From assembly GCF_001194135.2 (NCBI RefSeq), contig NC_068982.1, positions 57,255,327 through 57,296,404 of the forward strand: a stretch of 41,078 bases of DNA, given 5' to 3'. Origin of the DNA: Octopus bimaculoides (Eukaryota). Made by a program: the position numbers and the translations under genes. The number at the start of each line of letters is the position of its first letter. Within the stretch, counting starts at the first letter, position 1. The notes beneath the pieces were generated by a model. That model was not told the origin of the DNA. It saw nothing but the letters and a program-made list of their open reading frames with translations, and did not search any database. Below are positions 9,952 to 36,954 of this stretch, piece after piece.

Positions 9952-10506
9952 NNNNNNNNNNNNNNNNNNNNNNNNNNNNNNNNNNNNNNNNNNNNNNNNN
10001 NNNNNNNNNNNNNNNNNNNNNNNNNNNNNNNNNNNNNNNNNNNNNNNNNNNNNNNNNNNNNNNNNNNNNNNNNNNNNNNNNNNNNNNNNNNNNNNNNNNN
10101 NNNNNNNNNNNNNNNNNNNNNNNNNNNNNNNNNNNNNNNNNNNNNNNNNNNNNNNNNNNNNNNNNNNNNNNNNNNNNNNNNNNNNNNNNNNNNNNNNNNN
10201 NNNNNNNNNNNNNNNNNNNNNNNNNNNNNNNNNNNNNNNNNNNNNNNNNNNNNNNNNNNNNNNNNNNNNNNNNNNNNNNNNNNNNNNNNNNNNNNNNNNN
10301 NNNNNNNNNNNNNNNNNNNNNNNNNNNNNNNNNNNNNNNNNNNNNNNNNNNNNNNNNNNNNNNNNNNNNNNNNNNNNNNNNNNNNNNNNNNNNNNNNNNN
10401 NNNNNNNNNNNNNNNNNNNNNNNNNNNNNNNNNNNNNNNNNNNNNNNNNNNNNNNNNNNNNNNNNNNNNNNNNNNNNNNNNNNNNNNNNNNNNNNNNNNN
10501 NNNNNN
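9952..10506. other. assembly gap (others: 19092-19610, 30142-30704, ~33604-33905, 35724-35733)
   Basis: Runs of N. Confidence 1.
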
Positions 10507-13965: not shown

Positions 13966-14124
13966 TAATTAATCGAGCTGCCTATGAAAAGTAAAAGATC
14001 CAAACCCCTGCTAAAGATTTCTTGCTTTGTCTCTACTTTAGAAAATATTATTATTACGAAAGACGACCAGACTTGTTATGAGAGTCGGACAAGACGCCTG
14101 TTAAAATATTTCTTACAGATTTTA

Positions 14125-14673
14125 AGGCGGCGAGCTGGCAGAAACGTTAGCATATTGGGCGAAATGCTTACTTTGTCCTTGTTTGTCCTCTGTATGTTTA
14201 GCCGCTTGTGGGCAATAAAGAAATAAGAAGCGTTCGCACATCGGACGGAATGCTTAGAGGTATTTCGTCTGTCGTTACATTCTGAGTTCAAATTTTGCCG
14301 AGATCGACTTTGCCTTTCATCCTTTCGGGGTCGGTTAAATAAGTACCAGTTACGCACTAGGGTCGATGTAATCAACTTAATCCTTTTGTCTGTCCTTGTT
14401 TGTCCCCTCTATGTTTAGCCCACTGTGGGCAATAAAGAAATAAATATTTGTTACGGATTTTAAGGCGGCGAGCTGGCAGGAACGTTAGCACGTCGGGCGA
14501 AATACTTAGCAGTATTTCGTCTGTCTACGTTCTGAGTTCAAATTCCGCCGAAGTGGACTTTGCATTTCATCCTTTCGGGGTCGATAAATTGAGTACCAGT
14601 TGCGTCCTGGAGTCGATCTAATCGACTGGGCCCTTCCTCCAAAATTACGGGCCTTGTTCCTTGAGTAGAAAAG
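14125..14673 (+). mobile_element. SINE family B cluster (two copies plus nested tail fragment)
   Basis: Heads at 14125 and 14463, two different 3' tails, and a 20-bp target sequence present three times. Confidence 0.9.
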
Positions 14674-15120: not shown

Positions 15121-16623
15121 AACATCGATAGAGCATTGTTAATATTGCTAATATATTATTGAAATTACTAATATGCGAATAATATTATCAATAATATTAC
15201 TAATATGGCTCTAGGACATAACTATATCCGAACTTAAGATAACATCGATCTGCATCAAATTTGAACTTTTACTTTCATGAAGTAAAGTTGTGTAGCCTCA
15301 TATGGAGATTAGCTTTGATTCGTTACTGTATTTCCAAGTATATTTGGTAGGCGACATTGTAAAATATCTTGATAAAATGTGATACATAGTTTTAGAAAAT
15401 ACACTTCAGAATTAGCATGGCTAATATGTTTATTGGCGAAAGTCTGCTTCCATATGATAGATGTTAATGCTTTTATTGTGTAGTCTTGTTTAGACTGAAT
15501 TTATTCGTCCAGGCCAGAGTAATTAATGTATTTACACGCGGAAGTATTAACAACGTAAATGTATGGTGTTATTATTGTATCAAGTGGTTGTCTTAGGTAC
15601 TATCAGTATGGTTGCATCTGGTGTTGTCTCAGATTTGTATTTCATTCATTCAAATTTCTAATCAACTCCTTTCTTTCGACTGCACTGATAATCGATTTGT
15701 TACCTTTTGTGTGACAACAGTCAATAAAGATATGCTGCAAACTTATTGTGACTTAGAAACAAATGAGAAACATTAATAACTGCCATTTTAAACTGCGCCC
15801 TGATATTGAATAATTGCCTGTCGCGCTCTCTTGTTCATGGGATGTCAATTTGATATTTTATGTGTTTGAATGGTAAGGTTCTCTTGTAAATCACACAATT
15901 CAAAGTTCAATCTCACTAGGTTGCTTCATGGGCAACTCTATATTCAACCTATGCCTTGTCAGTGAGATTAAATAGACAGAAATGCTAAGAAGGTCATGGA
16001 ATGTACCTACAAACAAAACGTCCAGTCTTGCCAGAGCGTGTTTAGTTTATTCCGCTTGAGAAATACACAATTCAGTGAAATACAGGACAATTTACACGGT
16101 AGTTCATTGGGCTCGGAAAATCTGATCACTTAAGATGGATTTAACGATTAGGTTATATAGAATAGAACCGTTGTAAGGTATATTCCAGTCTAGCACTACG
16201 ACAGTATGTATGTGTTCTCTTTCTCTTTTTAATTTAGAGTAAATTTAACCGGCCATCTACTTGATAGTAATGTTGTATGTATGTATCTGTGAGTGGTTGC
16301 AATATAGCTGGTGTTGCAGCTGTATTAAGGATAATTTATTATATCTTTGCTCTGAGAGTGAGTGCTTGAAAATATTTTGATTGTATCCTACTCAATGATA
16401 TCATAGAATTTAAATAATATGATATTTAATATGAAATATAATAATACGATTTTCGACAGCAAAGTCATTAATTTACATATTAAAGAAACAATCACAGATT
16501 AACAATTACCATGAGATTCTCGAATGTCAATAATTTATTACTTCATTTACATATTGCAGCCCACTCATTATAAAAACGCTGTGTCTCTCCATACATGCAT
16601 AACGGTTTCAATACTAGATTACA

Positions 16624-18230
16624 AATTTCGTCGAGCAGTCTGGTGAGCTGAGGTTTGATTGCTGTTGTTTGAATTGTGGATTGTTTTGTGCTGCTTTGCA
16701 GCGGTTTTCTTGTGCTTTCTCTCGATTTTTTTCGAGAGATAGCCATGGCAAAAAGGATGTTTTGTTTTGGTGGTTCCGAGTTGTCCTCTTCGGAAGAGGA
16801 GCTGGTACTTGCTGTCGACGGGATGGATAGGTGCCTGGGGAGGGGACGTTTTTCAGAAGTGGAAGAGGTGGAGAAAAGGGAGGTGGACTTTTCAAATATT
16901 GAAGGATTTGAGGAGGTGGTGACGTTGAGCTGTCCAGAAGATAGTGGACGAGATGGATAGGAGGACTATGGTATGCAGGGTGTACTCGGTGGAAGAGGGG
17001 AAGGCGGAACATGTAGAAGCTGAAATTATGGAAAGGGCGTTGTGCTCAGTCTGGCGGGACATGGCGTATCTGGCCGGAGGAGGTAAATTCGGAGTTATTG
17101 TAGTCCATTACAGGACGGAGGTCAGGGCAATGGAGCACGCTATGGAGACAGTAAAATCGGAAAAGGTGGTCCTTCTACCCACTTGTTTGGGAAGAGAGAC
17201 TTCCGGGATTGGGGTGGAGGGAGTCCCACCAGAGGTGGATGTGGCTTGGGTCGCGGCGGCTATTCTTCTGGGAGGTGGGGAGGAAGTGGTCGTCCTCCAA
17301 GCCACAGGGGTGGAGGGCTCGATTTGGAAGGGCGAGCAGTGAATCTGGTTGTGCAGGGTGCGGTGGAAGCACTGGAGGGTTTGGTGGAAGCGGTATCAGT
17401 CGGAGGTGTAGTGTTGAAAGTGTAAGTGTAGGGCAGGACTCCTCGTTCTTTTAAATGTGGCCAAAAAGGCTACATTAGAGCACACTGCCCTCTGCAGAAG
17501 CAGACTACGGAAAGGATGGACAAGATGCCGGAAAAAGAGCAAGAGGAGGAAAAGGGAAGAGAAGAAGCATGGACAATTGCAGAAGAAAGAAGGGAAAAGA
17601 GGAAGTAAGAACAGCGCGCTTTGGAACCCTAAACCTTACCCACCCCACCCATATCCTCTCAGATCCACCCTCTCCCCACAGACACCGAACCCACCCATCT
17701 CCCTCCTACATAATCCAAAAAGAAATGCAATCACAGCAAAGTACAAAGAATTCCCCTCCCCGTGAAGTAAATTACGTTTGTATATTGACGAACAAAGAGA
17801 AGAGGGAACTAATTCGGAAAGTAACAGATTGGAAAACGGCAAAATTTGTCGGTACAGAAAGATATATGAACATAGTAGGGTGGCACATGTGTTTGCTACT
17901 TTCAGAAAAGCAGGTAGAAGAAGTGAGGAAATACAAAAGAGGTTATAAGTTCTGGAAAATCAATACAGACGCTAAAAGGATACCAGACAGCACAGGATAT
18001 GAAGAACTATTAGAGGAATTTGGTGTAGATGTGGTAAAAGGACTCCCAAGGAAGTAAGTGATGCTGCTTGAGGTGGGGCAAGTAGCACATTTTCATTATC
18101 ATTTTATCATTCATCTTATCATACGTTTAATTCTATTTTTTCAGTTTTATTTAGTTTCGTGTTATGTGTCCCCACATGTGTTTGTGTTGACCCCTCTGTA
18201 TGGGCCCCTTGTAGGCAATATAGAAAGAAA
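16624..18230 (+). mobile_element. ORF1-only non-LTR retroelement (HAL1-like), full unit with TSD
   Basis: 24-bp TSD TAACGGTTTCAATACTAGATTACA (16600-16623) and TAACTGTTTCAATACTAGTTTACA (18231-18254). 121-nt 5' UTR, gag-like frame, 3' tail ending GGCAATATAGAAAGAAA. Confidence 0.85.
16745..18057 (+). pseudogene. L1/Tx1-type ORF1 (gag-like) pseudogene with CCHC zinc knuckle
   Basis: Stitched across frameshifts: MAKRMFCFGG.. / RRTMVCRVYS..LLPTCLGRETSGIGVEGVPPEVDVAWVAAA / VLKV*V*GRTPRSFKCGQKGYIRAHCP (knuckle 17447-17491) / C-terminal frame 17569-18057. Confidence 0.75.
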
Positions 18231-18424
18231 TAACTGTTTCAATACTAGTTTACAGTTTGCATCCCATTTCAAATTGGAATATATTTCCTTAATTTTATAA
18301 CTTCTTAAGGTTATCTCTCCTACCTTAATATTCTACAAAATATATTAAATGTTCTTGTAAGCTAATACTGTGTTCTACTGTGTTAGCAGTACTATTGAAT
18401 CTTTTGTTAAGTAATTTTGTTTCT

Positions 18425-19091: not shown

Positions 19092-19610
19092 NNNNNNNNN
19101 NNNNNNNNNNNNNNNNNNNNNNNNNNNNNNNNNNNNNNNNNNNNNNNNNNNNNNNNNNNNNNNNNNNNNNNNNNNNNNNNNNNNNNNNNNNNNNNNNNNN
19201 NNNNNNNNNNNNNNNNNNNNNNNNNNNNNNNNNNNNNNNNNNNNNNNNNNNNNNNNNNNNNNNNNNNNNNNNNNNNNNNNNNNNNNNNNNNNNNNNNNNN
19301 NNNNNNNNNNNNNNNNNNNNNNNNNNNNNNNNNNNNNNNNNNNNNNNNNNNNNNNNNNNNNNNNNNNNNNNNNNNNNNNNNNNNNNNNNNNNNNNNNNNN
19401 NNNNNNNNNNNNNNNNNNNNNNNNNNNNNNNNNNNNNNNNNNNNNNNNNNNNNNNNNNNNNNNNNNNNNNNNNNNNNNNNNNNNNNNNNNNNNNNNNNNN
19501 NNNNNNNNNNNNNNNNNNNNNNNNNNNNNNNNNNNNNNNNNNNNNNNNNNNNNNNNNNNNNNNNNNNNNNNNNNNNNNNNNNNNNNNNNNNNNNNNNNNN
19601 NNNNNNNNNT

Positions 19611-27423: not shown

Positions 27424-27469
27424 CATCATTATTATTACTTTATTGTTACTTTGTAATTACTTTATTTGC

Positions 27470-29370: not shown

Positions 29371-29894
29371 CTCGCAGCAGGGGAAGCCGGAAAGCAACTT
29401 CTGTGGCTTGATTAGATACCATTACTTCTCAGTAACTGTCTTCTCAAATCTCGACACGGTGGGGAGTAAGGAAGCAATTTATGCGTTTCTTCACCTATGT
29501 CGAGATTTGAGACCGTTGAGACCGCTAGAGGAAGCAACTCCATAAGTTCCTTCCCCTGTTACTAGGGCCACTACTAGTGACGGTCTCAAATCTCGCCAGA
29601 AATTGCTTCCCCTGTGTCGAGATTTGAGACCGTCTCAAATCTTGCAGCAGGGGAAGCAACTTCTGTGGCTTGATTAGATGCCGTTACTTCCCTAGTAACT
29701 GTCTCAAATCTCGATACGGGGGTGGGGAGCAAGGAAGCAACTTATGAGTTGCTTCCCCTATGTCGAGATTTGAGACCGTTGAGACCGCTAGAGGAAGCAA
29801 CTCCATAAGTTCCTTCCACTGTTACTAGGGCCACTACTAGTGACGGTCTGAAATCTCGCCAGAAATTGCTTCCCCTGTATCGAGATTGGAGACC
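29371..29894. repeat. two tandem ~262-bp units built from inverted ~28-bp sub-repeats
   Basis: The motif GTCTCAAATCTCG.CACAGGGGAAGCAA and its inverse recur about 10 times; period 262-263 bp; flanked by (TA)n. Confidence 0.9.
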
Positions 29895-30120: not shown

Positions 30121-30719
30121 TATATATATATATATACACTTNNNNNNNNNNNNNNNNNNNNNNNNNNNNNNNNNNNNNNNNNNNNNNNNNNNNNNNNNNN
30201 NNNNNNNNNNNNNNNNNNNNNNNNNNNNNNNNNNNNNNNNNNNNNNNNNNNNNNNNNNNNNNNNNNNNNNNNNNNNNNNNNNNNNNNNNNNNNNNNNNNN
30301 NNNNNNNNNNNNNNNNNNNNNNNNNNNNNNNNNNNNNNNNNNNNNNNNNNNNNNNNNNNNNNNNNNNNNNNNNNNNNNNNNNNNNNNNNNNNNNNNNNNN
30401 NNNNNNNNNNNNNNNNNNNNNNNNNNNNNNNNNNNNNNNNNNNNNNNNNNNNNNNNNNNNNNNNNNNNNNNNNNNNNNNNNNNNNNNNNNNNNNNNNNNN
30501 NNNNNNNNNNNNNNNNNNNNNNNNNNNNNNNNNNNNNNNNNNNNNNNNNNNNNNNNNNNNNNNNNNNNNNNNNNNNNNNNNNNNNNNNNNNNNNNNNNNN
30601 NNNNNNNNNNNNNNNNNNNNNNNNNNNNNNNNNNNNNNNNNNNNNNNNNNNNNNNNNNNNNNNNNNNNNNNNNNNNNNNNNNNNNNNNNNNNNNNNNNNN
30701 NNNNTATTCATCTCCCTTT

Positions 30720-33376: not shown

Positions 33377-34297
33377 GGCAACAACCTGAAACTAGTCTGC
33401 AGATGCCAAACCAGCAGGGGCACACTGCTGACCTCCCCTGTTCGAAGGTTATAAAGGACACAGGTTTCGTGTGTCACATAGCTAGCTAGAGGCGATGGCT
33501 TCTTGGAGCTAATTCACAGCAGCTTTCGTCCTAATTTTGGGACTGCCATGTTGGCTTGGCGATAACTATTAATTTCCAGTTTAGAAATATTAATAACTAT
33601 ATANNNNNNNNNNNNNNNNNNNNNNNNNNNNNNNNNNNNNNNNNNNNNNNNNNNNNNNNNNNNNNNNNNNNNNNNNNNNNNNNNNNNNNNNNNNNNNNNN
33701 NNNNNNNNNNNNNNNNNNNNNNNNNNNNNNNNNNNNNNNNNNNNNNNNNNNNNNNNNNNNNNNNNNNNNNNNNNNNNNNNNNNNNNNNNNNNNNNNNNNN
33801 NNNNNNNNNNNNNNNNNNNNNNNNNNNNNNNNNNNNNNNNNNNNNNNNNNNNNNNNNNNNNNNNNNNNNNNNNNNNNNNNNNNNNNNNNNNNNNNNNNNN
33901 NNNNNGCGTGTATGTTTGTACATGTGTGTACCGCTTCTCCTTGTGTGTGCATGTGTGTGTTTTGCAACTATGTGCCGTGTTTGTATGTATAGATGTGCAT
34001 CTCCGTGTGTGGACGTGTGTCTTCATATGTGTCCTTGTGTGAAGTAAAGTGTGTGTGTATATATGGTCATGTTTTTCAGTTTTCATTTGTGTATGTGTAC
34101 TTGTTTGATCATAGAACCTATGTACCTATCCATCTGTATGTTGATCTGTTTACTTTCATATCCATATGCTTATATACATGTGCATATACATATATATATA
34201 TATATATATACACCCTCCCACACACATAGATACATCTATCTACATAACAGCCCACTAATTATCCTACTGTACCTGTGGGTACGGGGTATGATATCTA

Positions 34298-35490
34298 CTA
34301 TGTATATTTCCTATTTAGTTTTGGGGAAGCTTCATTTATGAGGACATACTCCTGTATTTGTCTGAGTGTTGGGTCTTTTGGGTGCTTGCATAAGATGCGG
34401 ATGTCAAGCTGACCCAGGTTGCCTCCATGTTGGTCCTTGGCATGTTGGTAGAGTATGGAGAACTGGTTTTTTTTTGTCATCATATTGTCTCAAATGTTCA
34501 TTTAGTCGTTCCGCAATGCTCCTAGATGTCTCCCCTATGTACGTCACGTTCATGTCTTTACAAGCACCTTCTATGCATCTTATGCTGTAAACTACGTTTG
34601 TAGTTCTACAGTTAATGTCAGGGCTAATCCTACATACCATGCAGTTATCATTGGTACATAGTTGTGATTTGACGGCGTTTCCTGGATTTTCATCAATCTT
34701 AATTTTGACTTTGGTCTCCTTCAGGGTTTTTCTAAATCTACGAGCTAGTTCTCCATGCGCTGTGGCCTTTACAAACATCACTCCTTGATATTTGTCAGAT
34801 TTATACGTGTTCACACTGTTTGCTTTGTCACAAGTTCTTTGTATCCTATTCCAGTCTTTGTTTCTATATCTAGGGCAGTTACCACTGGTATCATTACGTA
34901 TAATGTTATCTAAGTTCCTTCTAGCACCCCTGTATACTCGAACCCTATCTTTCTGATCATATCCAGAGAATTGCATGCGGTGCATGCAGTTCTATATGTT
35001 TTTTCGTTTCATAGGGTTCGCATAGTGGGGACACGTTGTTCATTATCCTAACTAAGTTTGCTATCAGTATGTTAATCTTCATGTTGTGTGACAAAGCTGA
35101 GTTCTTGTGAACAACATTTTGAAGCTATGGGTTTCATATAATAGGAGTGGAGGAGCTGCACTCTATTGTTCACAGTTTCTAACCAAAGTTCAGTATCAAG
35201 AACGGGGAGTCTATTGTTGGGGTGCCTAGTGGGGTAATCTATAGTTACCTTAATACTTTGGTGGAAGGAGTTAGCTCCTTGCTGGATGGTCTCCATTACG
35301 TTCCTTTCAGTTTCTACACTACCGTTACGAGAGTTAGTCCTATGATATTAATGTCTACATATCTACTGTAGAGTAGAAGAGTTGTGGACTGTTCTGATAA
35401 CATATGCTTAAGTTTTCTGTCCCACTAGGTCATGAAGAGGCCGGCTACATCTCCAGCTACACCGACACCGATGGCTGCACTTTGAACCTG
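34298..35490 (-). mobile_element. Penelope-like element relic: RT C-terminal half, Cys linker, GIY-YIG endonuclease
   Basis: Minus peptides AIGVGVAGDVAGLFMT*WDRKL..YSRYVDINII (RT motif, one Asp lost), TIDYPTRHPNNRLPVLD, CTNDNCMVC..CRTTNVVYSIRC..YIGETSRSIAERLNEH and RQIQEYVLINE. The Cys linker suggests the Neptune group (inference). Confidence 0.9.
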
Positions 35491-35723: not shown

Positions 35724-35874
35724 NNNNNNNNNNAAGGAACGCAGTTTGAATAACGGACAGTCAAAACTGTTGTAAGACACAACGAAAAAGTTAGAAAAGT
35801 AAAAAAGAAAGGTGTAAATTTTACCAGTGGGTGTGTTAAATTATAAAAAATCTTACAAACCAAATCCCAAAACC

Positions 35875-36216: not shown

Positions 36217-36954
36217 TTTTTTTTTTTTTGCCCACAAGTGGCCAACACAGAGGGGACAATACAACCACATATATACATACATACATACATACATACATAC
36301 AGATACATGCTTTTGTTGAATGTCATTGTTCAAAGAATTATACAAAATTTGTTGAAATACAGGTGTGGATCAGTTCAGACGTCAATACACAAAGCAAATC
36401 ATAACAAAATGGCTTCGTATTGCTGTTTTAGCCTTTTGCTTACTTCATTCATCAGACTGCAGCGAAGCTGGCGGGAATGGAATTCATTGTGTTTTCTTAA
36501 TGAGGATGCAATACATTGTATCTACTTAATGCAGATTCAATGTTTTATTTTAATTTTGTATATTTATTGTTGAAAAAATGAGATAATATATATTAACTAT
36601 ATTATATGACTCACATTTATGTTATCGAAGAAATGTTTATATATGATATAACCAGAACAGCACTTACTAACTTTGTAGGGTTACCAAGGCTGGTAATAGA
36701 AAAGAGAACGTATCTTTGAGACTGAAAATCTTATTCGATTCCTTTAAACAAAAGTATACGAAGGACCAGGTAGAAGTGATAAGGGTTAAGTCAGGTGATG
36801 GATTACGACTGCCAGCCAAATTTGGAGGAATGCAAACAAAAGCAACTGCACTGGAGTTCGAATTCAAAACTTTCAAAAGCAGAATTAAAGTTTGCAATCT
36901 TTTTAACCAGAAACTCGCCTGTTTCTACGTCTCCACTCTCGGTAATCCTTTCTG

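What the first reader, a model, noticed from the sequence alone, without database searches (positions are those of the whole stretch)
16600..18254. Complete 1.6-kb ORF1-only retroelement (half-LINE) bounded by a 24-bp TSD
Seen: a 24-bp direct repeat with 2 mismatches brackets a 1607-bp unit. The unit has a 121-nt leader, ATG at 16745, a decayed gag-like frame with RRM-like core and CX2CX4HX4C knuckle (SFKCGQKGYIRAHC), a stop at 18057, and a short 3' UTR with A-rich end. It has no endonuclease or RT remnant and no room for one. Established: LINE truncation normally removes the 5' end and ORF1, while ORF1-only elements mobilised in trans (HAL1, half-L1) are known in mammals. Inference: this retrotransposed as an ORF1-only unit, a cephalopod half-LINE family that supplies its own RNA chaperone and borrows ORF2. 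I am not aware of this being described in octopus but cannot search.
Basis: partly seen in the sequence, partly recalled or inferred. Interest (0 to 1): 0.85.

Follow-up and report, generated by a model that had tools for sequence, protein, structure and literature searches.

The report
Octopus half-LINE: ORF1-only retroelement copy
This 1.6-kb insert is a dead copy of an octopus jumping gene that kept only the RNA-binding gene (ORF1) of its parent LINE and lost the copying enzyme. Two more copies with the same layout and their own insertion scars in another octopus species show that such "half-LINEs" move as units, as HAL1 does in mammals.

Summary
A 25-bp direct repeat (23/25 identical) brackets a 1,606-bp unit made of a 121-nt leader, a decayed ORF1, a 172-nt 3'UTR and an A-rich end. 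One correction: the zinc knuckle in this copy is degenerate (Cys->Ser, His->Tyr).

The ORF1 has 117 relatives, and all 20 whose source was looked up are octopod. In eight sampled elements from four species, a homologous ORF1 is followed by APE endonuclease plus reverse transcriptase. That enzyme is closest to human L1 ORF2p. These elements end in the same 3' tail as the window unit, so the parent LINE kind is identified.

The window unit has no ORF2. Its ORF1 ends at the conserved GTAAGTGATG motif, which includes the ORF2 start codon, and runs straight into the 3'UTR.

Two further 1.6-1.7-kb units in O. sinensis have the same junction, 3'UTR body and tail, each with its own target-site duplication (16/16 and 17/18). 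One carries an intact 463-codon ORF1. The other splits a SINE cleanly. A 0.9-kb derivative lies in O. bimaculoides.

The half-LINE reading is therefore supported. This is a new octopod example of a known kind (HAL1-like). Copy number, catalogue status and trans-mobilisation remain untested.

The parts
16599..16623 (+). Left copy of the target-site duplication (25 bp)
   Evidence: It matches 18230-18254 at 23 of 25 positions. No shuffle out of 300 reached this.
16624..16744 (+). 5'UTR (121 nt)
   Evidence: The block TGCTGCTTTGCAGCGGTT...TTGTGCTTTCTCTC is shared with the 5'UTRs of the ORF2-less elements in L002 (84% over 58 bp) and L010, and more loosely L011-A.
16745..18057 (+). ORF1 pseudogene with a natural C-terminus. 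Order: N-terminal SEL-SSEEEL-AV motif, RRM, second RRM-like domain (inferred), CCHC relic, Pro-rich linker, C-terminal domain. It carries 3 frameshifts and 2 stops.
   Evidence: - phmmer with 16944-17339 gave 117 hits, the best at 6.7e-26.
- BLASTP of the conceptual ORF against the intact L011-A ORF gave 40% identity over 205 aa, E = 2e-38.
- The C-terminal Y..L.EEFG.DV...KGLP motif aligns with the ORF1 ends of full-length LINEs.
16944..17339 (+). Longest open stretch of the core (132 aa): a complete RRM fold plus the start of a second domain
   Evidence: AlphaFold2 pLDDT is 84 with a b-a-b-b-a-b order. The top Foldseek PDB matches are RRM domains.
17447..17488 (+). Degenerate CCHC zinc-knuckle relic (S-FK-C-GQKG-Y-IRAH-C)
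   Evidence: Read directly from the sequence. The position is intact in P0010, P0003, L011-A and L010.
18054..18063 (+). GTAAGTGATG: relic of the ORF1-stop / ORF2-start junction, including the ORF2 ATG
   Evidence: The same 10-mer, with at most one mismatch, sits at the ORF1/ORF2 boundary of full-length LINEs (L004 9333, L011 8981 and 14259). It also sits at the ORF1/3'UTR boundary of the ORF2-less L011-A (2028) and L010 (8901).
18058..18229 (+). 3'UTR (172 nt) with an A-rich end (AATATAGAAAGAA)
   Evidence: It aligns end to end with the L011-A 3'UTR (68.75% over 176 columns, E = 2.5e-8) and with L002. Full-length LINEs match only its last ~55 nt.
18176..18229 (+). Conserved LINE 3' tail (...CCCCTCTGTATGGGCCCCTTGTAGGCAATATAGAAAGAA)
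   Evidence: The tail is shared with full-length LINEs of O. vulgaris, O. sinensis and A. hians, with SINE copies at 14174-14226 and 14382-14445, and with 36217-36270(-).
18230..18254 (+). Right copy of the target-site duplication

Best explanation
The unit at 16624-18229 is an old, coding-dead insertion of an ORF1-only ("half-LINE") non-autonomous retrotransposon of octopods.

**Parent.** It derives from an L1-superfamily LINE, probably the group annotated as L1-Tx1. Full-length members of that LINE are about 5.3 kb. They carry ORF1 (RRM, RRM-like domain, CCHC, C-terminal domain), ORF2 (APE endonuclease, RT, zf-RVT) and a conserved 3' tail ending in AATAAAGAAA.

**What the half element keeps and lacks.** It keeps the 5'UTR, all of ORF1, the ORF1-stop/ORF2-start motif GTAAGTGATG, its own short 3'UTR and the LINE tail. 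It lacks all of ORF2.

**How it most likely works.**
- The 1.6-kb RNA is transcribed from the 5'UTR (inferred).
- Its ORF1 protein coats that RNA (inferred).
- ORF2 protein from a full-length partner recognises the shared 3' tail and copies the RNA into a nicked target by target-primed reverse transcription (inferred). SINE copies in the window carry the same tail.
- Insertion leaves 16-25-bp target-site duplications (shown).

**Origin.** ORF2 was probably lost by a deletion or template jump between two similar short sequences that flank it. These are AAGGTAAGTGATG before ORF2 and AAAGTATCAGTGG(T/G)G about 25 nt after its stop (inferred).
For: **Shown: the unit is a bounded insertion with no ORF2.**
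- The TSD-bounded 1,606-bp unit contains no endonuclease or RT.

**Shown: its ORF1 is a LINE ORF1.**
- In L001, L003, L004, L009 (two copies) and L011 B, C and D, a homologous ORF1 is followed by endonuclease and RT.
- The L004 ORF2 scores Pfam Exo_endo_phos, RVT_1 (6.5e-31) and zf-RVT.
- Its best PDB match is human L1 ORF2p at 1.4e-61, against R2 at about 1e-24.

**Shown: the tail is shared.**
- The same 3' tail occurs in the half elements, the full-length LINEs and SINE copies.

**Shown: other units have the same architecture and their own TSDs.**
- L011-A has a 16/16 TSD and an intact 463-aa ORF.
- L010 has a 17/18 TSD. Its reconstructed empty site aligns across the junction with a SINE (81.6% over 152 bp, E = 1.7e-39).
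- L002 is a 0.9-kb derivative with the same 5'UTR and 3'UTR.

**Shown: the ORF2-less elements form lineages.**
- The junction and 3'UTR body are shared only among ORF2-less elements (4 of 4, against 0 of 8 full-length).
- In the ORF1 tree, L010 and L011-A group at 100% bootstrap. The window unit groups at 100% with L002 and other sequences, none of which is a confirmed full-length element.
- Between L010 and L011-A, pN is 0.27-0.31 and pS is 0.69-0.74. This fits purifying selection on ORF1, though dS is saturated.
Against: - Only three full units and one shortened one were seen. All but the window copy were reached through ORF1-homologous annotated proteins, so the sample is biased.
- No sibling copy close to the window unit was found. 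The nearest protein is 48-53% identical, and the word-based protein searches returned nothing close.
- The ORF1 tree does not join the O. sinensis pair to the window's clade with support.
- The short direct repeat flanking ORF2 could produce the same deletion more than once.
- Transcription, ORF1 protein function and trans-mobilisation are inferred, not shown.
- The predicted hairpin in the tail is weak: -1.8 kcal/mol and 4 pairs.
Confidence: 0.75

Rival explanations
1. By-products that recur but do not propagate. Each ORF2-less unit arose independently from a full-length LINE RNA when the reverse transcriptase jumped between the two similar short sequences flanking ORF2. The units would share an architecture without forming a self-propagating lineage.
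For: - Full-length elements carry AAGGTAAGTGATG before ORF2 and AAAGTATCAGTGG(T/G)GAGGCGGGGC shortly after it. The half elements read GTAAGTGATGCTG..GAGG.GGGC at that point.
- L002 shows a second internal deletion, placed differently, at another microhomology.
- HAL1 is reported to have arisen several times in mammals (PMC5753468).
Against: - The 3'UTR body downstream of the junction (TAGCA..CTTTCAT.TTATCATTTT...) is shared by all four ORF2-less elements and by none of the eight full-length ones.
- The ORF1s of the ORF2-less elements form their own well-supported groups.
- The units are only 53-57% identical overall, yet keep the same length and layout.
Confidence: 0.13
2. One-off genomic deletion. 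A full-length LINE inserted at 16624 with this TSD, and ORF2 was later lost from the chromosome by recombination or replication slippage.
For: - A 5' LINE fragment with ORF1 but no 3' part lies at 27754-~29340 in the same window, so LINE copies in this region can lose sequence after insertion.
- The direct repeat flanking ORF2 could mediate such a loss.
Against: - Both breakpoints fall within a few nucleotides of the ORF2 start and about 25-35 nt past the expected ORF2 stop. The same junction is seen in two other TSD-flanked units in another species.
- The 3'UTR body is of the half-element type, not the full-length type.
Confidence: 0.07
3. Retrocopy of a domesticated host gene. A LINE ORF1 was co-opted as a cellular gene (as with L1TD1 in mammals), and these units are processed pseudogenes of its mRNA.
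For: Several relatives are annotated as single genes in octopus genomes, for example XP_052823999 and XP_036368115. One unit has an intact ORF.
Against: - The units carry the LINE 3' tail and the ORF1/ORF2 junction relic.
- They are deeply diverged from one another, and each has its own TSD.
- One lies inside a SINE and another at the 5' edge of a LINE.
- No intron-containing parental gene was seen. The annotated 'genes' examined are the elements themselves or chimeric models.
Confidence: 0.03

Closest known systems
HAL1 (half-L1) of mammals
   Same: It is a non-autonomous LINE derivative that keeps the 5'UTR, ORF1 and the LINE 3' end and encodes only ORF1p. It is presumed to use ORF2p from the autonomous LINE. 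HAL1 is said to have arisen repeatedly (Kojima 2018, PMC5753468).
   Different: - The parent here is an octopod L1-superfamily LINE, not mammalian L1.
- The ORF1 protein here has an RRM, a second RRM-like domain, a CCHC knuckle and a C-terminal domain. Mammalian L1 ORF1p has a coiled coil, an RRM and a CTD (my own knowledge for the mammalian side).
- The 3' end here is a conserved sequence tail shared with a SINE, not just poly(A).
HeT-A of Drosophila (Jockey clade, gag-only telomeric element)
   Same: It is a non-LTR element that encodes only a Gag/ORF1-type protein with CCHC knuckles and depends on RT supplied in trans (my own knowledge).
   Different: HeT-A is confined to telomeric head-to-tail arrays and serves telomere maintenance. 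The octopus units are dispersed insertions with TSDs, one of them inside a SINE. No telomeric context was seen.
Full-length octopod L1-superfamily LINEs (L004, L011-B/C/D, L001, L003, L009; probably the 'L1-Tx1' families of the 2026 O. vulgaris annotation)
   Same: They share a homologous ORF1, the GTAAGTGATG junction motif and the 3' tail. The O. vulgaris annotation lists 13 recently active L1-Tx1 families. Their mean insertion length is about 5.4 kb (2,288,644 bp over 421 insertions), close to the 5.28-kb unit in L004 (PMC13282606).
   Different: They carry a ~3.4-kb ORF2 (APE, RT, zf-RVT) and a different 3'UTR body.
SINE-LINE tail partnership (stringent-type LINEs)
   Same: A non-autonomous element shares the 3' tail of its LINE partner. 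SINE copies at 14174-14226 and 14227-14445 carry the same tail.
   Different: The half element is Pol II-type and protein-coding, with a LINE 5'UTR, not a small-RNA-derived head.

Membership tests
Half-LINE (ORF1-only non-autonomous LINE derivative; the HAL1 kind) | The ORF is homologous to the ORF1 of an autonomous LINE | tested here: met
   A homologous ORF1 is followed by endonuclease and RT in eight elements from four octopod species.
Half-LINE (ORF1-only non-autonomous LINE derivative; the HAL1 kind) | No ORF2 (endonuclease or RT) between the ends | tested here: met
   tblastn with the family's endonuclease and RT finds nothing in the window. ORF1 ends 172 nt before the right TSD.
Half-LINE (ORF1-only non-autonomous LINE derivative; the HAL1 kind) | The 3' end is shared with the autonomous LINE | tested here: met
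   The last ~55 nt are 78-79% identical to the tails of L004 and L011-C.
Half-LINE (ORF1-only non-autonomous LINE derivative; the HAL1 kind) | Several copies with the same ends and internal junction but different TSDs | tested here: met
   The window unit (23/25 TSD), L011-A (16/16) and L010 (17/18) qualify, plus the shortened L002. This is only n = 3+1.
Half-LINE (ORF1-only non-autonomous LINE derivative; the HAL1 kind) | Mobilised in trans by the partner's ORF2p | not testable with these tools
   This needs a retrotransposition assay or population data on new insertions.
HAL1 sensu stricto | Derived from mammalian L1, with an L1-type ORF1p | tested here: not met
   All 20 relatives whose source was looked up are octopod. 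The ORF1 carries a CCHC knuckle. PDB sequence searches with P0010 found only nucleocapsid knuckles, not L1 ORF1p.
L1 superfamily LINE (L1/Tx1) | APE endonuclease, RT and a C-terminal zinc motif in ORF2; RT closest to L1 | tested here: met
   This is met for the full-length relatives only: Exo_endo_phos, RVT_1 and zf-RVT, and human L1 ORF2p at 1.4e-61. The window unit itself has no ORF2.
L1 superfamily LINE (L1/Tx1) | Placement within the L1 or the Tx1 clade by RT phylogeny | not tested
   No reference RT set was available. The 'L1-Tx1' label rests on the match in length with the published O. vulgaris annotation.
RRM + CCHC type LINE ORF1 protein | RRM fold | tested here: met
   AlphaFold2 pLDDT is 84 with a b-a-b-b-a-b order. 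The Foldseek top hits are RRM domains, though E-values are only about 0.01-0.1.
RRM + CCHC type LINE ORF1 protein | CX2CX4HX4C zinc knuckle | tested here: inconclusive
   The knuckle is degenerate in the window copy (S...C....Y....C) and gives no Pfam hit. It is intact in relatives.
Processed pseudogene of a host gene | Derived from a spliced mRNA of an intron-bearing cellular gene | tested here: not met
   All relatives examined are LINE ORF1s or chimeric gene models. The ends are LINE ends.

The most novel reading that the evidence does not exclude
Octopods harbour an old half-LINE lineage that was still active recently. It has split into subfamilies only 53-57% identical to each other, yet keeps ORF1 under purifying selection. 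It rides on the same 3' tail as the autonomous L1-Tx1-like LINEs and as a SINE subfamily, giving three tiers (LINE, half-LINE, SINE) that compete for one reverse transcriptase. ORF2 loss would be made easy by a short direct repeat flanking ORF2. The intact 463-codon copy with a perfect TSD in O. sinensis would then be a live element.
Probability: 0.5. Interest if true: 0.65.

Novelty: new member of a known kind. Interest (0 to 1): 0.58.

Why it matters
ORF1-only LINE derivatives are well described only in mammals (HAL1) and, in a special telomeric form, in Drosophila (HeT-A).

An independent case in cephalopods has a different ORF1 protein type and a sequence-specific 3' tail. It would show that "keep the chaperone, borrow the polymerase" is a recurrent strategy. 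It would also give a natural system for asking whether ORF1p supplied in cis helps an RNA capture ORF2p.

There is a practical side too. Such units are annotated as ordinary genes in octopus genomes (for example XP_052823999 and XP_036368115) and enter chimeric gene models. Work on LINE activity in the octopus brain has so far considered only RTE elements, which lack ORF1 (PMC9115989).

Tried and rejected
**Searches that found nothing useful**
- Pfam on the window's own translated pieces gave nothing meaningful.
- Rfam gave no hits.
- The word-indexed protein search returned nothing for the stitched ORF, only P0001 for the RRM+knuckle part and nothing for the C-terminal ORF. Close sibling copies therefore could not be found this way.
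- Exact look-ups of the window's own ORFs found them not on record.
- Bao & Jurka 2010 (PMC2923044) is not held.

**Uninformative loci**
- The Logan contigs L005, L006-L008 and L012 hold related ORF1s but stop before the ORF1 end, so they say nothing about ORF2.

**Ideas considered and dropped**
- Splicing as the cause of ORF2 loss: the GTAAGT splice-donor-like motif is retained in the half elements, so it was not used as a donor.
- 5' truncation: I first read L002's upstream TCTGCTGCCGCGTGCAC as its 5' end, which would make the window unit 5'-truncated. It more likely belongs to another LINE's 5'UTR into which L002 inserted, with a possible 14/16 TSD (ACACAACACAGTTCGT). That TSD is not above chance on its own.
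- Tail hairpin: the GCCCCTTGTGGGC hairpin has little support.
- Second element: no TSD or 3' end could be found for the ORF1 element at 27.7-29.3 kb.
Full report
**1. The observation**

The region was read directly.
- A direct repeat lies at 16599-16623 and 18230-18254, with 23 of 25 bases identical.
- It brackets 16624-18229, which is 1,606 bp.
- In 300 shuffles of the two flanks the best 25-mer match never exceeded 20. Real control window pairs reached 22 or more only at microsatellite-rich positions.
- The unit is 47% G+C, against 33-38% in its flanks.
- It has a 121-nt leader, an ATG at 16745 and a stop at 18055-18057.
- Reading through needs three frame changes (about 16940, 17330 and 17600) and passes two stop codons at 17423-17431.
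- The quoted knuckle SFKCGQKGYIRAHC is a relic. The first Cys is Ser and the His is Tyr.
- Pfam finds nothing meaningful in the window's own translation.

**2. What the ORF is**

An exhaustive phmmer search with the longest open piece (16944-17339, 132 aa) found 117 proteins. The best had E = 6.7e-26.
- All 20 hits whose source was looked up come from Octopus bimaculoides, O. vulgaris, O. sinensis or Argonauta hians, from unnamed Logan sequencing-run contigs, or from one unnamed MetaClust entry.
- Intact relatives carry RCFKCGQKGHIRANC-type knuckles, and some reach the Pfam zf-CCHC threshold.
- An AlphaFold2 model built on 54 of these sequences has pLDDT 84 and the beta-alpha-beta-beta-alpha-beta order of an RRM.
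- Foldseek against the PDB returns almost only RRM domains, with high probability but weak E-values.
- The C-terminal ~100 residues align with the ORF1 ends of relatives through a Y..LKEEFG.DV...KGLP motif. The window ORF therefore ends at its natural stop.

**3. The ORF1 belongs to a real LINE**

DNA around the homologues was fetched.

In L004 (O. vulgaris) a 5.28-kb unit occurs three times head to tail. It holds:
- ORF1.
- An APE endonuclease (Pfam Exo_endo_phos).
- A 993-aa RT ORF with RVT_1 (6.5e-31) and zf-RVT.
- The RT ORF's best solved-structure match is human LINE-1 ORF2p at 1.4e-61, against R2 proteins at about 1e-24.

The same ORF1-endonuclease-RT order is seen in L001 and L011-B, C and D (O. 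sinensis), L003 (Argonauta) and two copies in L009 (O. bimaculoides).

Six of the eight (all but the two L009 copies) end in a tail close to TGTCCCCTCTGTGTTTGGCCCCTTGTGGGCAATAAAGAAATA.
- The window unit ends in the same tail (18176-18229).
- So do two SINE copies at 14174-14226 and 14227-14445 and a fragment at 36217-36270(-).

A 2026 curated O. vulgaris annotation lists 13 recently active L1-Tx1 families. Their mean insertion length is about 5.4 kb, which fits this LINE (PMC13282606). I did not test clade placement.

**4. ORF2 is missing, and missing neatly**

No endonuclease or RT of this family is detectable anywhere in the window.
- In full-length elements the ORF1 stop and the ORF2 start lie in a conserved motif, AAGGTAAGT(G/A/T)ATG.
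- The window unit has GTAAGTGATG at 18054-18063, which includes the ORF2 ATG.
- It then continues with CTGCTTGAGGTGGGGC. In full-length elements the similar GAGGCGGGGC lies about 35 nt after the ORF2 stop.
- The unit is therefore 5'UTR, whole ORF1, a few nucleotides, then the 3'UTR.

**5. The same architecture recurs with different target-site duplications**

*L011:495-2185 (O. sinensis, gap-free assembly; 1,691 bp)*
- It is flanked by a perfect 16-bp duplication, GGATGTGATATAATGA.
- It holds an uninterrupted 463-codon ORF1 with RCYKCGLRGHIRAFC.
- The ORF runs through GTAAGTGATGCTGGCGGAGGGGGCCGTTAGCATCGCTTTCATGTTATCATTTT into the tail.

*L010:7458-9056 (O. sinensis; 1,599 bp)*
- It has the junction GTAAGCGATG... 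and no endonuclease or RT within 16.7 kb.
- It has an 18-bp duplication, 17/18 identical.
- Removing it and one repeat copy restores a SINE that aligns across the join (81.6% over 152 bp, E = 1.7e-39).
- Its ORF is open for 372 codons and then has one or two frameshifts.

*L002 (O. bimaculoides)*
- It holds a 0.9-kb relative with the same 5'UTR block and 3'UTR.
- ORF1 jumps from about residue 225 into the 3'UTR at a short microhomology.

*Shared untranslated regions*
- The 3'UTRs of these ORF2-less elements align with each other over their whole length (window against L011-A: 68.75% over 176 columns).
- Full-length LINEs match only the last ~45-57 nt.
- That gives 4 of 4 against 0 of 8, or p of about 0.002 by Fisher's exact test (my own arithmetic).
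- The 5'UTRs share a block just upstream of the ATG.

**6. Lineage or recurrent accident?**

*For a lineage*
- In a neighbour-joining tree of the ORF1 core, L010 and L011-A pair at 100% bootstrap.
- The window unit sits in a 100% clade with L002, P0010 and other O. bimaculoides or Logan sequences. None of these is a confirmed full-length element.
- Between L010 and L011-A, nonsynonymous differences per site (0.27-0.31) are far fewer than synonymous ones (0.69-0.74, saturated).
- This fits selection on ORF1. It is not proof that the selection acted while ORF2 was absent.

*Against a single origin*
- The two groups are not joined with support, and the units are only 53-57% identical overall.
- Full-length elements carry similar short sequences on both sides of ORF2: AAGGTAAGTGATG, and AAAGTATCAGTGG(T/G)G in the 3'UTR.
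- A deletion or template jump between them would give exactly this junction and could happen more than once.

The exclusive 3'UTR body argues that the sampled units descend from ORF2-less ancestors. Independent origins, as reported for HAL1 (PMC5753468), are not excluded.

**7. Mechanism**

Shown:
- The element is bounded by target-site duplications.
- It carries a LINE ORF1.
- It lacks ORF2.
- It shares the LINE tail.
- It recurs as a unit.

Inferred:
- It is transcribed from the 5'UTR.
- ORF1p acts in cis.
- The partner's ORF2p recognises the tail.
- Insertion is by target-primed reverse transcription.

The tail's small hairpin (GCCCCTTGTGGGC) has little energetic or covariation support.

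**8. State of this copy**

It is dead.
- It has three frameshifts, two stops and a broken knuckle.
- Two of 25 positions differ between the repeat copies.
- No close sibling was found. The nearest protein is 48-53% identical, and the nearest DNA (Logan contig L012) is 67-70% identical and ends before the junction.

**9. Comparison and novelty**

- The closest known kind is mammalian HAL1. Drosophila HeT-A is a second gag-only non-LTR element, with a special telomeric role.
- The octopus units work like HAL1 but are not HAL1. The parent LINE, the ORF1p architecture and the tail-based 3' end all differ.
- Neither the octopus brain LINE study, which found only RTE elements without ORF1 (PMC9115989), nor the 2026 O. 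vulgaris repeat paper, which has no mention of ORF1 or non-autonomous LINEs, describes them.
- Repbase and Dfam could not be consulted.
- I rate it a new member of a known kind, of moderate interest.

Noticed in passing
window 27754-~29340 (+): This is a second, divergent LINE ORF1 remnant. It has a 5'UTR starting TTTGCTGCGGAGTGCAC near 27466, a serine-rich N-terminus, an RRM core and a decayed knuckle (PRCNFCGTTSHLRAFF). Its core is homologous to the studied ORF1 (BLASTP E = 7e-14). It groups with full-length LINEs of A. hians and O. sinensis. It has no ORF1 C-terminal domain, no ORF2 and no tail. It runs into a (TA)n tract and a 263-bp tandem repeat (29392-29894), then an N gap.
   Followed up: partly
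window 14120-14445 (+); also about 13 SINE-body matches across the window: These are SINE copies (head GGCGGCGAGCTGGCAGAAACGTTAGCA...). The copies at 14174-14226 and 14227-14445 end in the same 3' tail as the L1-like LINE and the half element. Other copies of the same SINE body in the window match only positions 1-~155, so their 3' ends do not match this tail. SINE subfamilies may therefore use different LINE partners.
   Followed up: partly
window 36217-36270 (-): A 54-bp copy of the LINE tail ends in A13 and sits next to (ATGT)n and (AC)n microsatellites. It is probably a severely 5'-truncated LINE or SINE insertion.
   Followed up: no
L004:2400-17026; L011:495-16850; L009:9760-20300: Full-length LINEs of this group lie head to tail with almost no spacer. 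L004 has three near-identical 5.28-kb copies. L011 has the half element followed by three different subfamilies. L009 has two copies. L011-A sits at the 5' edge of a LINE, L002 appears to sit in a LINE 5'UTR and L010 sits in the 5' part of a SINE. This may reflect a target preference for retroelement ends, or tandem duplication.
   Followed up: no
window 18054-18063; L004:9333; L011:2028, 8981, 14259; L010:8901; L001:~7805: The motif at the ORF1-stop/ORF2-start boundary, (A)AG|GTAAGT, is a consensus 5' splice site. It is conserved at the DNA level although the ORF1 frame and stop position differ between elements. In L001 it is followed by a pyrimidine tract and an AG just before the ORF2 ATG. 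It may act in splicing or in ORF2 translation control.
   Followed up: no
window 34404-34985 (-): A 193-aa ORF has a GIY-YIG nuclease domain (Pfam E = 2.6e-5). It is probably the endonuclease end of a Penelope-like element.
   Followed up: partly
proteins P0089, P0027, P0001 (O. bimaculoides and other octopod annotations): Some gene models fuse this LINE ORF1 to host-type domains: C2H2 zinc-finger arrays in P0089 and LDL-receptor class A repeats in P0027. P0001 splices out of the L002 element at CAAG|GTAAGA. These could be annotation chimeras or real exonisations of the element.
   Followed up: no
window 9952-10506, 19092-19609, 30142-30704, 33604-33905, 35724-35733: There are five N gaps, and microsatellites are very dense, as in a scaffolded short-read assembly. 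Structures next to gaps, such as the second ORF1 element, cannot be trusted to be complete.
   Followed up: no
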